A DNA stretch of 64,000 bases, from positions 186,001 through 250,000 of the IMG/VR virus record IMGVR_UViG_3300010158_000027; one strand, written 5' to 3'. Both the position numbers and the translations under genes were made by a program. Of the stretch, positions 3,731-60,268 are shown one piece after another (position 1 is the first letter of the stretch; each line of letters starts with the position of its first letter). The notes under the pieces were generated by a model. That model was not told the DNA's origin, ran no database searches, and saw only the letters and a list, made by a program, of their open reading frames with translations.

Positions 3731-3792
3731 ATTTAGTTAATTAACCATCATTTTATTATTTTGTAATGTATTTATATATAAATTAAAATATT

Positions 3793-15049: not shown

Positions 15050-15198
15050 TACGTGGGAAATACTAAAAAAGTGTATATATTTGTGTCACACTTTTAAAAC
15101 GAAAAAACAATAAAAAGGATTAATAAAATATTTATTTATAGAATATGTTTGGGATTGGGGAAAAAATATATAACTTTGTAGTATATCTAAAAAACAAA

Positions 15199-23864: not shown

Positions 23865-24489
23865 TTTTTAATCTATATAATCTTTTTTTCTCAAACCCCT
23901 TCTCCTCTAATACACCATATATCCATTTTCTTTGTGCTGTAGACACGTCTCTAACAAAAATACCATCACTTCTACCGACACTAATAAAATAATCCTGTAG
24001 AGACTCTAAAAATCTTATAGACTCGTCTTTGTCCTTCAAAGAAAAAACACTAACATCTGAATTGATTTGTATACAAATTTTATTATTTAATGTGAATATG
24101 CTTTTTAAATCTTTTGTTTTACAATAGGTTTTAACAAGACTTAGTAATGTGATTTTAGATTTATTCTGCCAGTCGTATATGAGTTCCTCAGTATAATACT
24201 TTTCTATTTTTAAAAAAACGTACTCTGGGTTTTCTAAATTTACCGGGACATTCCTACCTAAATCATCCGTTAAAAATAAACTATTTTGAATTTTAGTCTT
24301 ATTTGTTAAAATTGCCAACTCATAGTTTGATTCTTCCGCATTTTCTATTAACTTTGGAAATAAAACCGAACTACTTTGTTTAACAAGTTCATTGAATTTA
24401 TCTAACGAACGTTTTTCTGTACGGTAACGTTTGATAATTTTTCTTTTTTTCCTATTTTTAAATAAAACTATTAAGAAATCCAATTGCAT
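23845..24489 (-). CDS. Hypothetical protein
   Basis: 214-aa ORF with no competing long + strand ORF. Confidence 0.65.
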   Translation of the reverse strand: MQLDFLIVLFKNRKKRKIIKRYRTEKRSLDKFNELVKQSSSVLFPKLIENAEESNYELAILTNKTKIQNSLFLTDDLGRNVPVNLENPEYVFLKIEKYYTEELIYDWQNKSKITLLSLVKTYCKTKDLKSIFTLNNKICIQINSDVSVFSLKDKDESIRFLESLQDYFISVGRSDGIFVRDVSTAQRKWIYGVLEEKGFEKKRLYRLKTTFSKR

Positions 24490-25477
24490 GAAAAATTACT
24501 ATGAAATTTTAGGTGTTGACGAAAAAGCAACACAAGCCGAAATAAAAAAAGCATATAGAAAATTAAGTAAACAATATCATCCAGATGTAAACCCTGACGG
24601 TGAAGAAAAGTTTAAAGATATTTCTGCGGCGTATGACAATATTGGAGATCCCAATAAGAGAAAAAATTACGATAATCAAAAAAGCAATCCATTTGCTGGT
24701 ATGGGTGGGGGATTTGATGTTAATTCTATGTTCGAACAAATGGTGAACGGTAATAGACAGAGACAACCAAAGGCTCCTGATAAAATTTTAGAGATAGTAT
24801 TAACTCCAGTTGATAGTTTTTTTGGCGTTAAAAAAGACATAGACTACGACGTATATTTAAAGTGTGATCCATGTGATGGGACTGGTGGGGAAAAGACTGG
24901 TTGCGCCACCTGTAAAGGTAGAGGGGTAGTCATCCAAATTTTTGGTACTGGTATGTTTAGACAACAGGTCCAAATGAATTGTAATTCCTGTAATGGGCAA
25001 GGATCAATACTTAAACGTAGATGTGAATCATGTATTGGTAACGGGGTAATACCAAGCAAAGAAAAATTAAATGTGGATATACCAAAAAATGTTGATAACG
25101 GTGATCATATGAGAGTTAGACTTAGAGGCGATTATTACCAACAATCCAAAATGAGAGGAGACTTAATTTTAAAGGTTACCATCAACAATACCGATAAATT
25201 TGAAAAAATGGGTCTAGATCTTATTTTAAAGATGAAGTTAGATGTATTAGATTTAATTGTTATGGATGATTTAGAAGTCGAACATCCTGAAGGTAATTTA
25301 AAAATAAAAATGCCACTTAATTTTGATTCTGATAAACCATTAAGGATGCCGAATAAAGGGTATACTATTGATGGTAATAGAGGACATTTTTATTTAAAAC
25401 TATCCGTTAAAAAGGACGGGAATGTTGATGATACTATTAAAGATGAGATTAGAAATGTTTTAAAACAAACTAATTAG
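24488..25477 (+). CDS. dnaJ: DnaJ co-chaperone
   Basis: MKNYYEILGV J-domain with HPD; four CxxCxGxG repeats; C-terminal domain. Confidence 0.92.
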   Translation: MKNYYEILGVDEKATQAEIKKAYRKLSKQYHPDVNPDGEEKFKDISAAYDNIGDPNKRKNYDNQKSNPFAGMGGGFDVNSMFEQMVNGNRQRQPKAPDKILEIVLTPVDSFFGVKKDIDYDVYLKCDPCDGTGGEKTGCATCKGRGVVIQIFGTGMFRQQVQMNCNSCNGQGSILKRRCESCIGNGVIPSKEKLNVDIPKNVDNGDHMRVRLRGDYYQQSKMRGDLILKVTINNTDKFEKMGLDLILKMKLDVLDLIVMDDLEVEHPEGNLKIKMPLNFDSDKPLRMPNKGYTIDGNRGHFYLKLSVKKDGNVDDTIKDEIRNVLKQTN

Positions 25478-30402: not shown

Positions 30403-30687
30403 ATGAAAGTTGTTATTTTATACACAATGAAGGGATGTCCTTATTGTACCATGATTAAAGAAGAGTTAGAAAAATCAAACATTGATTTTTTAGAAAGAGA
30501 CATTGACGAATATGAACAGGAATATGATGAATACTCAAAACTAATAGAGAATGAATATATACCCGCGTTTTTACTTCTCACTCTTGATAATGAAGATAAT
30601 CCAAACAATATTAAATTATACGCCCCCGAAAGAGATTTCCAGGATATCCACGAGGGCGTTGAAATGGTTAAGGGGTATTTAAAATAA
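30403..30687 (+). CDS. Glutaredoxin-like protein
   Basis: ILYTMKGCPYC thioredoxin-fold motif. Confidence 0.85.
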   Translation: MKVVILYTMKGCPYCTMIKEELEKSNIDFLERDIDEYEQEYDEYSKLIENEYIPAFLLLTLDNEDNPNNIKLYAPERDFQDIHEGVEMVKGYLK

Positions 30688-31560
30688 AATTAAATCGCCA
30701 ACCATATTTAATTTTTTCCAAGGCGCATTGTCATCGTCATTAATTACATCATCGACGTGGTTAATTTCTGATGACAGATACAATTCCGTTAGTTCACTAA
30801 CTGTAAATGGAAACACATCCAATATTAATGACGTTAGCCACGGGGTTTTAACTATGTGGTTGTCGTTATAAATGAATAAATTAATATTCTCGTTATCTAT
30901 TGAAGATATTTTGTTTTCGGACGTTAATTTAACGTTCAGTTCTTTAGTTATACCAACCATTGATATATTATGAAAAATATGTTTTAAAGCCATGTGGTAT
31001 AACTTTTCGTTATTGTTTGATAAACCATAGAATTTTTCTGAAATGTAAGTCTCTTGGGAAAAATCAGATTTAAATAATTTATAATCACTAAACTTTGATT
31101 TTAAAATATGAACCACATCATCATTTTTTTCTGATAAACAATCGTAATAAATAGAGAGATTTGATTTATCTAATTTTAAATTAAAATATATGTTTTTATC
31201 AACAAATGAGTTAACGAATTTTTGTATGTTAAAATCGTTATAATCTTTTTTTAGTTGGTAGTCGATATCTATCGAATCATATTCGGGATCGGTAGTGTAG
31301 TTAATGATGTCAATAACTCTAATAGTCTTAGATAAATCTTCACTATATTTAGATGTAAACTCTTGAAAAATGTCAGCAACCATCAATGGTTTATCCGAAG
31401 ACGTTTTACCCTTTACGATAAAAAAATTCCTAACGTTTATTACTGAGATTTCAGTTTTGGCGTTAGGAACGGACTCATTTATTTTTTTCACTATAAGACT
31501 TGCAAAAATATTACAAAGGTTTTTGCCGTCTAAAAAGTTATAGTATTCTGTTGTATTCAT
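30679..31560 (-). CDS. Degenerate S-adenosylmethionine synthetase (MetK)-like protein
   Basis: N-terminal DGKNLCNIFASLIV...PNAKTEI..FFIVKGKT and C-terminal APWKKLN resemble MetK termini, but the GHPDK, GAGDQG and GGGAFSGKD motifs are absent. Confidence 0.55.
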   Translation of the reverse strand: MNTTEYYNFLDGKNLCNIFASLIVKKINESVPNAKTEISVINVRNFFIVKGKTSSDKPLMVADIFQEFTSKYSEDLSKTIRVIDIINYTTDPEYDSIDIDYQLKKDYNDFNIQKFVNSFVDKNIYFNLKLDKSNLSIYYDCLSEKNDDVVHILKSKFSDYKLFKSDFSQETYISEKFYGLSNNNEKLYHMALKHIFHNISMVGITKELNVKLTSENKISSIDNENINLFIYNDNHIVKTPWLTSLILDVFPFTVSELTELYLSSEINHVDDVINDDDNAPWKKLNMVGDLILF

Positions 31561-31624: not shown

Positions 31625-31771
31625 TTATTTTTTATTGTAATATTTTTCAACAATCTTAGTTACAGCCACCTTAACAGACTCGTTATTTTGTTGTTGTTGT
31701 GTTTGTGTTTGTTGTTGTTGTGTTTGAACTTGTGTTTGTTCGTTAGTTTTGTTTTTGCATCCGCACCCCAT
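31625..31771 (-). CDS. 48-aa MGCGCK-type small protein with Q/T tract
   Basis: Translated by eye; minus-strand TATTTAT upstream. Confidence 0.7.
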   Translation of the reverse strand: MGCGCKNKTNEQTQVQTQQQQTQTQQQQNNESVKVAVTKIVEKYYNKK

Positions 31772-31861
31772 GATTAAATTTTTTAGTAAGTTTATCGTTA
31801 TGTATATAAATATTTGATAACTATAAAAGAATCATTTGTAAATAGAAACTATTTATAGATT

Positions 31862-33058
31862 ATGGGATTAAAAAATAACGTCAGAATGGTTTTAAGAGAG
31901 CAAGATGAGGAATGGGTGAGCGTTTCACCTGAAGAGTATATGGACTTGTTAAAGTACGTTAACGGTGATGGATCGATTATAAACCGACTACCAGACTATA
32001 AGGGTAAAAAAATTAAAATTGATGGTGATTTAAATTTAAGTTATAATGGTGACATAACAAATATTGATAGTATTGATTACGTTGATGGAAATTTAGATAT
32101 ATCCAAAACGAATATAACTTATTTCGATAAAAATAAAGTTAAAGGTTGGTTCAGATATTATAGTAGTAGAATGGAGCAAATCGAAAATAAAAAGATTTTA
32201 GATAAAAAACTTAAAGTCCTTAATGGGTATCGAGAGAATGGTGAATGGAATGTGGAAGATAATGACGACGAGGTATCAAATGAAACGGAAGCTCTCTTTT
32301 TACATCTTATGGATATCGGATCTGTGGGTGAATATGAAAACGAAGAAGGGGAAACTGTACCTGAGGATAAATATTTTATTTGGACTGATAGTAATCATAA
32401 ATATTATGAATGGCTTGGAGATGAAAATGGCGAAAGCGAATGGTTGGTGATACCGGATGATAAGATAGATGATGTTGCTAGAGAATATCTGCAGGATAGG
32501 ATTGATGAGTCAGGTTATGAAACGTTCAGATCGTATGTTTGGGAAAATAATTTAGACACAGATCGAGTTGACAAATGGTTATATGACTATTATTCGGATG
32601 ATATAACAAATAATCCAGAGGAATTCGACATCCCAAAAACCCTTTCACATCAACAAAAAAACTACGTTAATATTTATACACAAAAAATAGAAAAACTAAA
32701 AATCAGATTAAACGACGAGGAGTTAGACGAAAATCAAGTTGAAGAAATTGAAGATGAAATAACCGACATCGAAGAAATTATTGAGGACATAAACGATTCT
32801 CCAGAGGGGGATTACGACGAGGCGGCTATTGAGGATGAAATAAATGGGCGAGTTAATGATGTTGGTTCTGATTTTTTAAGACACCTGAAGGATATGGGTT
32901 ATGATGATGATTATTTTTTAGAATTCGTTGACATCGATGGTGTTATTACCGATATAATTAATGATGACGGTTATGGTAATATTTTTAATGGTTATGATGG
33001 TAGAGATGATGAATATAAGGTAAACAATAAGTGGTACCACGTAATGAGACAAAATTAA
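31862..33058 (+). CDS. Acidic late protein with short GDLNLS/GNLDIS repeats
   Basis: TATTTAT 5 nt before ATG; leader ending VLRE. Confidence 0.7.
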   Translation: MGLKNNVRMVLREQDEEWVSVSPEEYMDLLKYVNGDGSIINRLPDYKGKKIKIDGDLNLSYNGDITNIDSIDYVDGNLDISKTNITYFDKNKVKGWFRYYSSRMEQIENKKILDKKLKVLNGYRENGEWNVEDNDDEVSNETEALFLHLMDIGSVGEYENEEGETVPEDKYFIWTDSNHKYYEWLGDENGESEWLVIPDDKIDDVAREYLQDRIDESGYETFRSYVWENNLDTDRVDKWLYDYYSDDITNNPEEFDIPKTLSHQQKNYVNIYTQKIEKLKIRLNDEELDENQVEEIEDEITDIEEIIEDINDSPEGDYDEAAIEDEINGRVNDVGSDFLRHLKDMGYDDDYFLEFVDIDGVITDIINDDGYGNIFNGYDGRDDEYKVNNKWYHVMRQN

Positions 33059-38396: not shown

Positions 38397-38432
38397 TCTT
38401 GGTTTTTTTGTTTTTAATGGTATTTATATGGT

Positions 38433-41796: not shown

Positions 41797-41947
41797 ATAA
41801 TATAAATACCATTAAATCAGGTAATGGGTACTAAATTTAGGATATCTGATGGAAATATTGAAGTTTTTATAAGAAACTTTGGCTTTTGGTGTTTTTAGAC
41901 GTATTTATTATTACTTCCGTAAAATATTCATTTTTTTTATTTAAACG

Positions 41948-45960: not shown

Positions 45961-47289
45961 GTCACTCCACCGAAAAACCCAACCATCTTTAGTGGTTGGG
46001 ATGTAAGGTGTGAAATAATTTAATATTTTTTTAATAAAATTCTTCTTTTTGTTAAAACCAAGATATTTATATAATATGAAGGTTATTAACAAATCATACA
46101 AAGTTAGAATTTACCCTAATAAAGAACAAAAAGTTCTTTTGGAAAAACATTTTGGTTGTATTAGATTCGTATATAATCATTTTTTAAATGTTAGAAATCT
46201 GGAATATAAAGAGAATAAAATCAATCTGAATTATGTTGTAACGGCAAATAAACTATCAGAAATGAAAAATTTAGAAAATTTTAACTTTCTTAATGAGGTT
46301 AATTCACAATCATTACAATGGAGTTTAAAATATTTAGATAACTCATTTAGAAACTTCTTCAGAGGACAAACAAAATTCCCTAATTTTAAGAAAAAATCAA
46401 ATAACCAATCATTTAAAGTACCGGTTAATTCTACATTTAAAATAGAAAAAAATAAAATTATTATCCCTAAATTTAGAGAAGGTATCCATTTTAGAGGTAA
46501 ATTAGAATTAAAAAATTTAATTAAATTTAATTCAATTAATATATCCAAAACCGCATCAGGTAAATATTATGCTTCATTACAAGGGGAATTTAATTATACA
46601 CCTAAAGTTCAAAATGATAATAAAGTAGGTATTGACTTAGGTTTAAAAAAGTTTTTAATAACCGATACTGGTGTTAAATTTGACAATCCTAAATTCCTTA
46701 AAAAACAATTAAAAAAATTAAAATACAAACAAAAACAATTAAGTAAAAAAAATAAAGGTTCTAATAATAGACAAAAACAAAGAATTTTAGTATCTTTAAT
46801 TCATGAAAAAATAAGTAATAAAAGAAATGATTTTTTACATAAGTTAAGTCAAAAAATAGTTAATGAAAATCAAATTATCTGTTTAGAAAACTTATCTGTT
46901 AAAAATATGATAAAAAACCATAAATTAGCTCAATCAATATCAGATGTTAGTTGGTCAAAATTTGTTGATATGTTAAAATATAAATCGGATTGGAATGATA
47001 GACAATTAGTTCAGATAGATAGGTTCTATCCTAGTTCTAAAAGTTGTTCCGCTTGTCATTATATAAACGAAGGATTAACATTAAAAGATGGAGAATGGAC
47101 TTGTCCTTCTTGTAATACACATCACGATAGAGATGTAAATGCTGCTAAAAATATCCTTATACAAGGAATAAACATATTGTCTGGTTCGGGAACCGAGTCG
47201 GACATTAAACAAAAACCTGTGGAGGCGTTGCGGTTACGCAAGTCTAAGAAACAGGAATCCCATTCATCTTTAGTGATTGGGTAGTTCAA
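45961..47289. mobile_element. tnpB-only IS200/IS605-family element
   Basis: Subterminal hairpins CCCAACCA-TCTTTAG-TGGTTGGG (45978-46000) and CCCATTCA-TCTTTAG-TGATTGGG (47259-47281); right end ...GTTCAA; left boundary approximate. Confidence 0.8.
46076..47284 (+). CDS. tnpB: TnpB RNA-guided endonuclease
   Basis: SYKVRIYP HTH; RuvC GIDLG, CLENL and DRDVNAA; CSAC/CPSC zinc finger. Confidence 0.93.
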   Translation: MKVINKSYKVRIYPNKEQKVLLEKHFGCIRFVYNHFLNVRNLEYKENKINLNYVVTANKLSEMKNLENFNFLNEVNSQSLQWSLKYLDNSFRNFFRGQTKFPNFKKKSNNQSFKVPVNSTFKIEKNKIIIPKFREGIHFRGKLELKNLIKFNSINISKTASGKYYASLQGEFNYTPKVQNDNKVGIDLGLKKFLITDTGVKFDNPKFLKKQLKKLKYKQKQLSKKNKGSNNRQKQRILVSLIHEKISNKRNDFLHKLSQKIVNENQIICLENLSVKNMIKNHKLAQSISDVSWSKFVDMLKYKSDWNDRQLVQIDRFYPSSKSCSACHYINEGLTLKDGEWTCPSCNTHHDRDVNAAKNILIQGINILSGSGTESDIKQKPVEALRLRKSKKQESHSSLVIG

Positions 47290-51565: not shown

Positions 51566-51612
51566 TTTACATAATACTTGACAATCTAAAAGTGATGGTT
51601 TAATATTATGTA

Positions 51613-51684
51613 AGTCAGTTAGCTCAGTTGGTAGAGCAATCCCCTTAAAAGGACGTGTCATTGGTTCGAACCCTTTACTGGCTT
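51613..51684 (+). pseudogene. Degenerate tRNA behind its own TTGACA-N17-TAATAT promoter
   Basis: Perfect acceptor (AGTCAGT/ACTGGCT) and D-arm; anticodon and T stems poorly paired. Confidence 0.55.
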
Positions 51685-51690
51685 ATTTTT

Positions 51691-58975: not shown

Positions 58976-60268
58976 ATGAATACATTAGATAAAAAATACA
59001 CAGATTTACTCCGAGATATATTAGATAATGGAGTCCGCAAGGAGGATCGTACTGGGACAGGCACACTTTCAGTATTCGGAAGACAGATTCGTCATAATAT
59101 GTCTGAAGGATTTCCATTGATTACATCAAAGAAGATGTATTTTAAGGGTATTGTAACCGAACTATTATGGTTTTTAAGAGGTGATACAAACATTAAATTC
59201 CTAATTGATAATAGTTGTCATATTTGGGATGGAGACGCTTATCAAGCTTATTGTGAGCGATATTGGGAATTAGATGAGATAGATAAAATAAAATATGGTA
59301 GTTCATATTATAATAACGAAACTAATGAGTATGAGTTCGAAACATATTCAAAAGAAGAATTCGTTGACTATATCAAAACAAATGATGAGTTTGCTAAGAA
59401 GTACGGAGATTTAGGCCCAGTTTACGGGAAGCAGTGGAGAGATTGGAAGCATATTAAAGAAGGCGGTTACTTACTTAAAAATGGAAATGAAGGTACAGGA
59501 ACAACAACTAAACATATTGACCAAATCGCAAACCTAATCAACGACCTTAAAACAAACCCAGACTCACGTAGGTTAATGGTTTCAGCGTGGCATGTTGGTG
59601 ATATAGATGAAATGACATTGCCGCCATGCCATTTCGGATTTCAAGTTTATACAAGAGAGTTTAGTTTGGACGAGAGAAAACAAATATTTGAAGATAGAGG
59701 ATACGTTTGCGATCTATGGCCATTTAATGGTGACTGGCATGGTGAATATGATGGATTTGGAATACCACGCAGAGCAATCTCATTAATGTGGTCGCAAAGA
59801 TCGTGTGATATTTTTTTGGGAATCCCATTCAACATCGCTTCTTATGGGTTGTTATTAGAAATCATTGCTAAAACAGTTAATATGGTTCCTGATGAATTGA
59901 TTGGAAACTTGGGTGATACTCATTTATATTCAAATCACATTGAACAAGCAAAGGAACAAATAGGTAGAGAATTAACATATAAAGAACGTTATGATATTTG
60001 GTTTGAGAATAATTACCAAACTGGTATGGAATATAATTTAGATGTCGAACAAGACTTTAATAATAATGTTGGTGAAGATTACATGACTGTACCACCTTAT
60101 AGGTCGAGAGAACCTTTTCCATTACCAACATTAAAAATAAATTCAGGAAATGATAATTGGCATTTATTAGGTATCAACGAAATCATTAATAGTTTAGATC
60201 CAGATATTACTTTTAAAATAGAGAACTATCAATCACATCCGACAATTAAAGCACCACTATCAAATTAA
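58976..60268 (+). CDS. thyA: Thymidylate synthase with large insertions
   Basis: DRTGTGT, ELLWFLRG, LGPVYGKQWR, PDSRR, LPPCH, QRSCD.FLG.PFNIASY, GDTHLY.NH. Confidence 0.95.
   Translation: MNTLDKKYTDLLRDILDNGVRKEDRTGTGTLSVFGRQIRHNMSEGFPLITSKKMYFKGIVTELLWFLRGDTNIKFLIDNSCHIWDGDAYQAYCERYWELDEIDKIKYGSSYYNNETNEYEFETYSKEEFVDYIKTNDEFAKKYGDLGPVYGKQWRDWKHIKEGGYLLKNGNEGTGTTTKHIDQIANLINDLKTNPDSRRLMVSAWHVGDIDEMTLPPCHFGFQVYTREFSLDERKQIFEDRGYVCDLWPFNGDWHGEYDGFGIPRRAISLMWSQRSCDIFLGIPFNIASYGLLLEIIAKTVNMVPDELIGNLGDTHLYSNHIEQAKEQIGRELTYKERYDIWFENNYQTGMEYNLDVEQDFNNNVGEDYMTVPPYRSREPFPLPTLKINSGNDNWHLLGINEIINSLDPDITFKIENYQSHPTIKAPLSN

What the first reader, a model, noticed from the sequence alone, without database searches (positions are those of the whole stretch)
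30679..31560. Collapsed, apparently inactive SAM-synthetase homologue in a phage with three methyltransferases
SEEN: 293 aa; the N-terminus (DGKNLCNIFASLIV..PNAKTEISV..FFIVKGKT), a late segment (EKLYHMALKHIFHNISMVGITKELNVKL) and the C-terminus (DVFPF..APWKKLN) follow the MetK order, but GHPDK, GAGDQG and GGGAFSGKD are missing. ESTABLISHED: MetK works as an oligomer, and phage T3 SAM lyase binds and inhibits host MetK to counter SAM-dependent defences. INFERENCE: a pseudo-enzyme that hetero-oligomerises with or modulates host MetK, or a SAM-binding sink.
Basis: inference. Interest (0 to 1): 0.6.

Follow-up and report, generated by a model that had tools for sequence, protein, structure and literature searches.

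The report
Catalytically stripped SAM-synthetase-fold phage protein
A jumbo phage carries a well-conserved gene whose protein keeps the whole fold of the enzyme that makes S-adenosylmethionine but has lost every residue that enzyme needs. It is therefore a previously undescribed non-enzymatic offshoot of a fold that was known from one enzyme only, and its job is still open.

Summary
Window 30679-31560 (-) is a real 293-aa gene under purifying selection (dN/dS about 0.1-0.2). Its AlphaFold model (pLDDT 88.6) matches only methionine adenosyltransferases (MAT/MetK): Foldseek E 1e-14, VIA Z 20 against 7 for the next unrelated fold. A deeper family profile also reaches MAT by sequence: 41 of 42 PDB hits, and sub-threshold Pfam hits in 23 of 48 relatives. 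All eight MetK substrate-binding motifs are missing in about 220 relatives. About 200 clusters exist, all 220-295 aa, all from uncultured phages.

New here:
- The gene is the second gene of a conserved two-gene unit. A TATTTATA promoter-like element comes first, then a 48-aa MGCGCK...VEKYY protein, then the MAT-like gene.
- The unit always runs against its neighbours and ends tail-to-tail with a glutaredoxin gene.
- The middle repeat is dispensable.
- The sheet face that carries the active site and dimer contact in MAT looks unconstrained.

One complex prediction gave no answer, and the loss of SAM-binding residues speaks against a canonical SAM sink. Best reading: a non-catalytic MAT-derived binding protein. 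It is an undescribed family, a new variant of a known kind, of moderate to high interest.

The parts
30679..31560 (-). CDS of the 293-aa MAT-fold protein (P0001); the stop codon is at 30679-30681
   Evidence: ORF. Fold. Family. Purifying selection. Single copy in the 281-kb genome.
31291..31560 (-). Residues 1-90: repeat 1 (strand, helix 12-30, hairpin 36-53, helices 61-79, strand 81-87). It corresponds to the MetK N-terminal Pfam domain and holds the conserved N17, F46, G51, T53, D84 and Y88. The GHPDK site is replaced by a variable D-G-K-N.
   Evidence: DSSP. Conservation. hmmsearch and hhalign mapping. PF00438 sub-threshold hits.
31051..31290 (-). Residues 91-170: the middle repeat. It is poorly conserved, 36-54% gapped across the family, and largely missing in a 220-250 aa subgroup.
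30682..31050 (-). Residues 171-293: repeat 3 plus C-terminal helices. It holds the conserved S174, G179, S181, K/R186, S244, L247, D248, F250 and W281. It matches S-AdoMet_synt_C profile positions about 47-122 only, so the P-loop part is missing.
31625..31771 (-). Small 48-aa ORF upstream of, and co-oriented with, the MAT-like gene. It has an MGCGCKNK start, a Q/T-rich linker of variable length, and a conserved SVK.AVTKIVEKYYNKK end. It is the likely first gene of the unit.
   Evidence: Present in 41 of 41 related loci checked, in frame, with conserved termini. Also present next to remote members at 21-24% identity. No Pfam or PHROG family.
31805..31812 (-). TATTTATA promoter-like element facing the small ORF and the MAT-like gene, 33 nt upstream of the small ORF start
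   Evidence: Coordinates. The motif is enriched in intergenic DNA and co-oriented with genes genome-wide. It is present about 30 nt upstream of the small ORF in 40 of 41 loci.
31850..31857 (+). Second TATTTATA element, facing the divergent 398-aa acidic gene (4 nt before its ATG)
30403..30687 (+). Glutaredoxin gene, convergent with the MAT-like gene and overlapping its 3' end by 9 bp. This neighbour is conserved even for the remotest family members.
   Evidence: Pfam. Synteny.
31862..33058 (+). Divergently transcribed 398-aa, very acidic protein (net charge -60) of unknown fold. It is context, not shown to be functionally linked.

Best explanation
Shown:
- The gene encodes a compact, highly diverged homologue of S-adenosylmethionine synthetase. 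It keeps the three-repeat MAT fold but none of the eight substrate-binding motifs.
- It founds a phage-only family of about 200 clusters at 50% identity.
- It is under purifying selection.
- It sits as the distal gene of a conserved two-gene unit (promoter-like TATTTATA, then a small MGCGCK...VEKYY protein, then the MAT-like gene). The unit is transcribed against the flow of a conserved accessory region in a deep clade of uncultured jumbo myophages.

Inferred:
- It does not make SAM. It works by binding rather than by MAT chemistry, that is, as a pseudoenzyme.
- Repeats 1 and 3 serve as a rigid platform whose conserved residues are mostly fold determinants.
- The variable middle repeat and the unconstrained sheet face are the evolving contact surface.
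- The co-transcribed small basic Cys-Gly-Cys protein is the most likely direct partner.
- The ultimate target (a host protein, possibly in SAM metabolism) is not identified.
For: Fold.

Sequence homology: 23 of 48 relatives hit PF02773 and 7 of 48 hit PF00438, all collinear and below the gathering score. The family profile against PDB sequences gives 41 of 42 hits as MAT, best E 0.0018. hhalign gives a collinear alignment, 12-290 to 16-377.

Loss of catalysis: motif counts of 0-1 in 222 family members against 70-79 in 81 control MetKs (motif list from 10.1101/2021.01.05.425418). Pfam matches skip the P-loop part of the profile. The positions equivalent to Glu42 and Glu55 are variable.

Real and selected gene: 341 word-search hits and 200 representative clusters, all 220-295 aa; dN/dS 0.09-0.2.

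Operon: the small ORF is in 41 of 41 loci and the TATTTATA element in 40 of 41. The same pair occurs in lineages at 21-24% identity.

The middle repeat is dispensable. The exposed face of the strands is variable and polar, while the buried face is conserved.
Against: - No binding partner has been demonstrated, and the pairing with the small protein rests on conserved adjacency only.
- The assignment of sheet faces comes from hairpin register and hydrophobic periodicity, not from coordinates, which I could not read.
- A handful of nearly invariant polar residues (N17, T53, D84, Y88, S174, S181, K/R186, D248) could form a new pocket rather than hold the fold together.
- One lineage (L145) has a 317-aa acidic gene upstream instead of the small ORF.
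- In a remote lineage a terminator-like hairpin separates the small ORF from the MAT-like gene, so co-transcription may be partial.
Confidence: 0.55

Rival explanations
1. Pseudo-subunit of host MetK. The dead MAT-like protein docks on the MetK dimer or tetramer and changes SAM synthesis. It could poison the shared active sites to starve SAM-dependent defences. Or, like the trypanosome 'prozyme' paralogues, it could activate the enzyme to feed the phage's three DNA methyltransferases.
For: It is a homologue of an obligate oligomer whose active sites lie between subunits (established knowledge of MAT). Its catalytic residues are lost. Two highly conserved DNA methyltransferase genes lie within 7 kb and a third lies elsewhere in the genome. 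There is a precedent that phages target MetK: the T3 SAM lyase-MetK complex (PDB 8bb1 appears).
Against: The complex prediction with E. coli MetK gave no answer (not counted either way). The face that should contact the invariant MetK sheet looks unconstrained across the family. MetK oligomers are stable, so subunit replacement within an infection cycle is kinetically doubtful (inference). The host, and so the relevant MetK, is unknown. SAM depletion conflicts with the phage's own methyltransferases.
Confidence: 0.15
2. Neo-functionalised enzyme or small-molecule binder. The MAT scaffold has been given a new pocket, built from N17, T53, D84, Y88, the S174-x4-G179-x-S181 loop, K/R186 and D248. 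It acts on, or senses, an unknown ligand.
For: These polar residues are 86-96% conserved over 104 cluster representatives down to about 20% identity. Several lie at beta-loop-alpha positions that are topologically equivalent to where MAT places GHPDK, the start of the gating loop and the DTYGG/P-loop (inference from topology).
Against: There is no Asp/His/Lys/Glu constellation typical of a catalytic centre. K/R186 aligns with a residue that MATs also conserve (the Arg of kvDrs), and F250, F252 and W281 align with MAT's FDL/FNF and W-E-K C-terminal blocks, which suggests fold determinants. The middle repeat, one third of the pseudo-threefold arrangement, is dispensable.
Confidence: 0.2
3. A genuine SAM synthetase with an unrecognisably diverged active site.
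For: Only the shared fold and the presence of SAM-consuming methyltransferases in the genome.
Against: All eight substrate-binding motifs are absent in the whole family, although they are kept from bacteria to archaea and in viral metK genes. About 90 residues, including the P-loop and the gating loop, are missing.
Confidence: 0.02
4. A chance ORF or a decaying pseudogene.
For: None beyond the lack of Pfam or PHROG hits for the protein itself.
Against: Full-length orthologues occur in 62 viral loci and about 200 clusters. dN/dS is 0.09-0.2. The fold is confident. The position and orientation are fixed.
Confidence: 0.01

Closest known systems
Bacterial/eukaryotic methionine adenosyltransferase (MetK/MAT; Pfam PF00438, PF02772, PF02773)
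   Same: Whole-chain fold with three beta-alpha-beta-beta-alpha-beta repeats (Z about 20, TMq about 0.7). Collinear weak sequence similarity in the first helix and hairpin and in the C-terminal domain, including the FDL/FNF and W-E/K-K-x-D/N blocks.
   Different: About 90 residues shorter. All eight substrate-binding motifs are absent. Pfam scores are below the gathering cut-off. The middle repeat is dispensable. The active-site/dimer face is not conserved. The family is known only from phages.
Archaeal MAT (PF01941; e.g. PDB 7p82)
   Same: Same fold at lower similarity (Z 14.6, 263 residues aligned).
   Different: No sequence match. Archaeal MATs are active enzymes of about 400 aa.
Virus-encoded canonical metK auxiliary metabolic genes
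   Same: A MAT-superfamily gene carried by a phage.
   Different: Viral metK genes retain the substrate-binding motifs and are inferred to be functional enzymes (10.1101/2021.01.05.425418). This family has none of the motifs, and G000 has no canonical metK.
Phage T3 SAM lyase (gene 0.3), which binds and inhibits host MetK
   Same: Only the hypothetical target: a phage protein acting on host SAM supply to evade type I R-M and BREX (10.1101/2023.02.27.530186).
   Different: An unrelated fold and a real enzyme. No evidence here for MetK binding (one search gave no answer).
Dead paralogues of oligomeric enzymes ('prozymes', e.g. trypanosomatid AdoMetDC prozyme)
   Same: A homologue of an oligomeric enzyme that has lost its catalytic residues yet is kept under selection. 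The comparison rests on my own knowledge of that system.
   Different: Hetero-oligomerisation with an active paralogue, the defining property, is not shown here. The active paralogue would be the host's, not the phage's.

Membership tests
MAT/MetK enzyme family (EC 2.5.1.6) | Three-domain MAT fold (three beta-alpha-beta-beta-alpha-beta repeats) | tested here: met
   AF2 pLDDT 88.6. Foldseek E 1e-14. VIA Z 20.3 over 288 of 293 residues. Atlas TM 0.76.
MAT/MetK enzyme family (EC 2.5.1.6) | Passes the Pfam gathering score for S-AdoMet_synt_N, _M and _C | tested here: not met
   P0001 has no hit even at E<=10. In the 20 relatives scanned one by one, C-domain hits score 13-22 bits against a cut-off of 25; the N-domain hit scores 13.8 bits against 33.1; no M-domain hit is among the listed families.
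MAT/MetK enzyme family (EC 2.5.1.6) | GHPDK motif (His14, Asp16: triphosphate and Mg binding) | tested here: not met
   0 of 222 family members against 79 of 81 control MetKs. The aligned positions 11-14 are variable.
MAT/MetK enzyme family (EC 2.5.1.6) | GAGDQG motif (Asp118) and the gating loop | tested here: not met
   0 of 222. The region falls in a MetK-only insertion in hhalign.
MAT/MetK enzyme family (EC 2.5.1.6) | P-loop GGGAFSGKD plus KvDRS (Lys265, Lys269, Asp271) | tested here: not met
   0 of 222. Pfam matches begin at profile position about 47, after the P-loop. Only the Arg position of DRS is kept as K/R186.
MAT/MetK enzyme family (EC 2.5.1.6) | acE and gEit (Glu42, Glu55), DaK (Lys165), TgRKi (Arg244, Lys245) | tested here: not met
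   0-1 of 222. The equivalents of Glu42 and Glu55 (residues 39 and 52) are variable.
MAT/MetK enzyme family (EC 2.5.1.6) | Dimer formed through the flat sheet, with inter-subunit active sites | tested here: inconclusive
   The inferred exposed face of the strands is variable and polar, but no coordinates and no homodimer prediction were available.
MAT/MetK enzyme family (EC 2.5.1.6) | Synthesis of SAM from ATP and methionine | not testable with these tools
   Needs an enzyme assay or complementation of a metK depletion strain.
MAT superfamily (homology, irrespective of activity) | Statistically supported common ancestry with MATs | tested here: met
   41 of 42 PDB sequence hits of the family profile are MATs, best E 0.0018. 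23 of 48 members hit PF02773, best E 4.3e-5. The fold is matched uniquely.
Archaeal MAT (PF01941) | Match to the AdoMet_Synthase profile | tested here: not met
   No match in G000 at E<=1. Structural similarity only, Z 14.6.
Phage inhibitors of host MetK (T3 SAM lyase type) | Physical binding to host MetK | tested here: inconclusive
   Complex prediction with METK_ECOLI scored 0.02, verdict 'no answer'. The host MetK is unknown.
Pseudoenzyme / prozyme-type regulators | Catalytic residues lost while the gene stays under purifying selection | tested here: met
Pseudoenzyme / prozyme-type regulators | Hetero-oligomerises with, and regulates, an active homologue | not testable with these tools
   Needs pull-down or co-expression with the host enzyme.

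The most novel reading that the evidence does not exclude
This is the first catalytically dead branch of the otherwise monofunctional MAT fold. The phage 'pseudo-MAT', made together with a small Cys-Gly-Cys peptide, engages host SAM synthetase (or another SAM-pathway protein) and retunes SAM supply during infection. It would do so either to blunt SAM-dependent defences or to feed the phage's own DNA methyltransferases.
Probability: 0.15. Interest if true: 0.85.

Novelty: new variant of a known kind. Interest (0 to 1): 0.6.

Why it matters
To my knowledge the MAT fold is a textbook case of one fold with one reaction, conserved from bacteria to humans. My library searches found no non-catalytic derivative described.

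A family of about 200 clusters that keeps the scaffold, discards the whole active site and stays under selection in large phages shows that the fold can be re-used. It gives a clean system to ask what a MAT platform is good for apart from catalysis.

If the target turns out to be host SAM metabolism, it would be a second, mechanistically different way for phages to manipulate SAM, besides the T3 SAM lyase.

The conserved small MGCGCK...VEKYY partner gene and the genome-wide TATTTATA element are also new handles on the biology of an uncultured clade of jumbo phages.

Tried and rejected
- Single-sequence searches found nothing: Pfam at E<=10, PHROGs (only a 0.08 hit), phmmer against PDB, BLASTP against E. 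coli MetK.
- The shallow family profile (A1) found only noise in PDB. It gave no significant hhalign match to an 81-sequence MetK profile (E. coli plus 80, mostly gammaproteobacterial). Only the deeper A2 profile worked.
- tblastn of P0001 and two remote members against 50,697 deposited phage genomes found no match, so there is no cultured relative and no known host.
- The BFVD viral structure library gave one uncharacterised 208-aa hit. The ESM Atlas feature search gave nothing.
- Complex prediction of METK_ECOLI with the family alignment scored 0.02, verdict 'no answer'. This is neither support nor evidence against. That used the only job, so the homodimer and the pair with the small protein could not be tried.
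- The sigma-70 promoter and terminator scan around the gene was not above chance.
- There is no radical-SAM gene, AdoHcyase, canonical MAT or archaeal MAT in the genome, so the protein has no SAM-cycle context.
- The acidic 398-aa neighbour was folded to test a DNA-mimic or anti-defence context. The model is confident, but there is no fold match beyond generic helical hairpins.
- The upstream 317-aa gene of lineage L145 has no Pfam family.
- A T4-type late promoter (TATAAATA) was considered and rejected. The functional orientation in this genome is the reverse, TATTTATA.
Full report
**1. The observation**

The ORF listing and translate give an ATG-initiated ORF at 30679..31560 on the minus strand, 293 aa. 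Taken alone, the protein has no Pfam match even at E<=10, only a 0.08 PHROG hit, and no PDB sequence match. BLASTP against E. coli MetK (fetched by annotation) is not significant.

**2. The gene is real and belongs to a family**

- The word search found 341 relatives. All are 286-296 aa, all are 'hypothetical' and none has a Pfam domain. Some lie on contigs up to 299 kb.
- An exhaustive profile search of 1.84 billion representatives found 200 clusters at E<=1e-3 and 79 at E<=1e-10. Apart from fragments (45-210 aa) and one 338-aa protein that matches only the C-terminal part, the best 150 are 220-295 aa. None of them is a canonical MAT of about 385 aa.
- Sixty-two IMG/VR loci carry the gene.
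- Codon analysis of 31 orthologues gives dN/dS of 0.09-0.2 for pairs with unsaturated dS.
- The gene is single-copy in its genome.

**3. Fold**

With a 33-sequence alignment, AlphaFold2 gives pLDDT 88.6 and pTM 0.85. The model shows three consecutive beta-alpha-beta-beta-alpha-beta repeats plus C-terminal helices.

- Foldseek against the PDB returns only methionine adenosyltransferases at the top, with E about 1e-14, probability 1.00 and TMq 0.65-0.71.
- VIA-align against 48,161 representative chains, independent of Foldseek, gives Z 20.3 (5h9u; 288 residues aligned, rmsd 4.1), Z 19.8 (4le5) and Z 14.6 (archaeal MAT 7p82). The next, unrelated folds are at Z 7 and cover a single repeat.
- The ESM Atlas shape search also returns MAT, TM 0.76.

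**4. Homology by sequence**

A broader alignment of 48 full-length members, down to 19% identity to P0001, changes the picture.

- Scanned one by one, 23 of the 48 members hit Pfam S-AdoMet_synt_C (best E 4.3e-5) and 7 hit S-AdoMet_synt_N.
- The matches are always collinear: protein residues about 177-255 to profile positions 47-122 of 138, and residues 11-72 to positions 17-78 of 99. In the 20 members scanned one by one they are always under the gathering score.
- The same profile against all PDB sequences yields 42 hits at E<=10, and 41 of them are SAM synthetases. The best E is 0.0018, with N-terminal (13-71) and C-terminal (180-287) stretches in the right order.
- hhalign against an 81-sequence MetK profile gives a full-length collinear alignment (12-290 to 16-377) of weak significance, P = 0.01.

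Fold and sequence together justify calling this a true, very remote MAT homologue.

**5. Loss of the catalytic apparatus**

[quoted passage not shown] It shows that viral metK genes keep them (10.1101/2021.01.05.425418). In 222 family members of at least 205 aa these motifs occur 0, 1, 1, 0, 0, 0, 0 and 0 times. In 81 control MetKs they occur 70-79 times.

In the alignments:
- The GHPDK site corresponds to the variable residues 11-14.
- Glu42 and Glu55 correspond to the variable residues 39 and 52.
- The GAGDQG/gating-loop region and the GDCGLTGRK...GGGAFSGKD region fall in MetK-only insertions.
- Only the Arg of DRS is kept, as K/R186.

SAM synthesis by the MAT mechanism is therefore excluded as far as sequence can tell, and so is SAM binding in the canonical site.

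**6. What the family does conserve**

Over 104 cluster representatives, the residues kept at 86% or more are N17, I38, F46, G51, T53, D84, Y88, S174, G179, S181, S244, D248 and F250. K/R186 is basic in 94%.

The middle repeat (about residues 91-170) has a mean column conservation of 0.13-0.24 and is 36-54% gapped over most of its length. A 220-250 aa subgroup lacks most of it.

From the hairpin register, one face of strands 36-43 and 46-53 is conserved and hydrophobic, which marks it as the core. The other face, which in MetK carries Glu42 and Glu55 and forms the dimer contact, is mostly variable. In repeat 3 the strands alternate between positions that are 92-98% hydrophobic and positions that are variable and polar.

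This is an inference from sequence periodicity, because I had no access to the model's coordinates. It suggests that the face which is invariant in true MATs is free to vary here.

**7. Genomic setting**

- The window is G000:C1:186001-250000 of a 281,269-bp IMG/VR virus record that is 96% complete.
- It is a contractile-tailed phage, with a portal and a tail sheath. It is only distantly related to T4-like phages, Flavobacterium phages and Microcystis phages, and to an uncultured 484-kb phage.
- Around the gene lie DnaJ, a D12/Dam methyltransferase, an LRR protein, a PcfJ-like protein, a glutaredoxin, a second DNA methyltransferase, SbcC, ThyA, a homing endonuclease and a TnpB-type transposase.
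- A third DNA methyltransferase lies outside the window.
- There is no canonical or archaeal MAT, no radical-SAM enzyme and no AdoHcyase.
- The order DnaJ, Dam, LRR, 96 aa, PcfJ-like, 114 aa, Grx, then the MAT-like gene on the opposite strand, then 398 aa acidic, 248 aa ... MTase is kept in all loci long enough to show it.
- Even members at 21-24% identity still end tail-to-tail with a glutaredoxin gene, there followed by a thioredoxin gene.
- The MAT-like protein evolves at a middling rate: 40-55% identity where the methyltransferases keep 82-94%.

**8. A two-gene unit (new)**

A 48-aa ORF at 31625-31771 (-) lies upstream of the gene on the same strand. It has an MGCGCKNK start, a Q/T-rich linker and a SVKVAVTKIVEKYYNKK end.

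- In 41 of 41 related loci examined there is an in-frame equivalent with both ends conserved and a linker of variable length. About ten loci have two tandem copies.
- Lineages whose MAT-like protein is only 21-24% identical have the same small ORF. An example begins with the same MGCGCKNK, continues Q-rich and ends in ..INKTVEKYY.. plus lysines.
- In one of those lineages the small ORF is followed by a terminator-like hairpin.
- One lineage has a 317-aa acidic gene upstream instead.

The octamer TATTTATA occurs 125 times in the genome. Of these sites, 55 lie in the 5.4% of the genome that is intergenic, and 42 are co-oriented upstream of genes against 14 in the reverse orientation. The motif mostly sits 3-19 nt before the start codon. 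In the window there are 30 sites against 15.8 +/- 3.3 expected. One copy at 31805-31812 (-) faces the small ORF and one at 31850-31857 (+) faces the divergent 398-aa gene. Forty of the 41 loci keep the copy about 30 nt upstream of the small ORF, and none has one directly upstream of the MAT-like gene.

The unit is therefore: promoter-like element, small protein, MAT-like protein.

**9. Function**

What is shown is a selected, non-catalytic MAT-fold protein made next to a small conserved protein. The rest is inference. I favour a binding or adaptor role (confidence about 0.55), with the small protein as the likeliest direct partner.

It lacks support for these reasons:
- The one complex prediction, with E. 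coli MetK as a proxy, gave no answer.
- The would-be docking face is not conserved.
- The host is unknown.
- Stable MetK oligomers are unlikely to exchange subunits quickly (inference).
- The phage's three methyltransferases need SAM.

If there is a MetK link, activation is as plausible as inhibition. A remodelled ligand pocket or a new enzymatic activity cannot be excluded (about 0.2). A true SAM synthetase is very unlikely (about 0.02).

**10. Novelty**

No deposited phage genome carries the family. The viral structure library holds one uncharacterised relative. Full-text searches found no MAT pseudoenzyme, in phages or elsewhere. I file the family as a new variant of a known kind: a member of the MAT superfamily by descent, and not a member of the MAT enzyme family by any of its defining catalytic features.

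**11. Limits**

- No coordinates were available for surface mapping.
- The host is not identified. Shine-Dalgarno motifs are depleted (3% of 256 ORFs against 9.4% background) and leaders are A-rich, which hints at a Bacteroidota-type host.
- Only one complex job was available.

Noticed in passing
whole genome G000; in the window e.g. 916-923, 3769-3776, 15133-15140, 31850-31857, 38421-38428 (+) and 31805-31812, 41801-41808 (-): A promoter-like octamer, [A/G]TATTTATA. There are 125 sites, 55 of them in the 5.4% of the genome that is intergenic. 42 are co-oriented upstream of genes, mostly 3-19 nt before the ATG, which implies leaderless or near-leaderless mRNAs. The motif often follows a GC hairpin plus a T-run. 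It precedes both structural and accessory genes. It is the reverse complement of the T4 late-promoter consensus, so it is not that element.
   Followed up: partly
window 31625-31771 (-): A 48-aa protein with an MGCGCKNK start, a Q/T-rich linker of variable length (CAA/ACA repeats) and a conserved ...VEKYY.KK end. It has no known family. At its ends it is better conserved across the clade than the MAT-like protein. In some relatives it is duplicated in tandem.
   Followed up: partly
window 31862-33058 (+): A 398-aa protein with 26% Asp+Glu, net charge -60 and pI 4.2. Its AF2 model is confident (pLDDT 90.4), but no PDB fold match was found beyond generic helical hairpins. It is conserved in 59 of 62 loci and is transcribed divergently from the MAT-like unit.
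   Followed up: partly
whole genome G000 (256 ORFs of at least 100 aa): Shine-Dalgarno cores occur upstream of only 3% of ORFs, against 9.4% at random positions, and leaders are A-rich. This pattern fits hosts that do not use SD, such as Bacteroidota. The host is otherwise unknown.
   Followed up: partly
family members P0147, P0155, P0159, P0163, P0174, P0187, P0191 and others (220-250 aa): A subgroup of the family matches only the N-terminal (about 1-105) and C-terminal (about 153-295) parts. The middle MAT repeat has been largely deleted, leaving a two-repeat derivative of the fold.
   Followed up: no
G000:C1:64957-67734 (locus L148:4957-7731), outside the window: The 925-aa portal protein carries HNH-endonuclease matches at residues about 114-278, ahead of the portal domain (412-806). 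This could be a fusion or an inserted homing element.
   Followed up: no
window 51612-51685 (+): ARAGORN calls a tRNA-like gene with an undetermined, two-base anticodon ('ta').
   Followed up: no
window 46049-47284 (+): An IS200/IS605-type transposase (TnpB-like; PHROG 506, E 5e-128) lies inside the phage genome.
   Followed up: no
window 24431-25477 (+): A full-length DnaJ (J domain, CXXCXGXG zinc-finger domain and C-terminal domain) is encoded by the phage and conserved in the syntenic loci.
   Followed up: no
window 58976-60268 (+): The thymidylate synthase is unusually long (430 aa). Its match covers protein residues 1-352 but only profile positions 29-280 of 335, which suggests an insertion of about 100 residues in the enzyme.
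   Followed up: no
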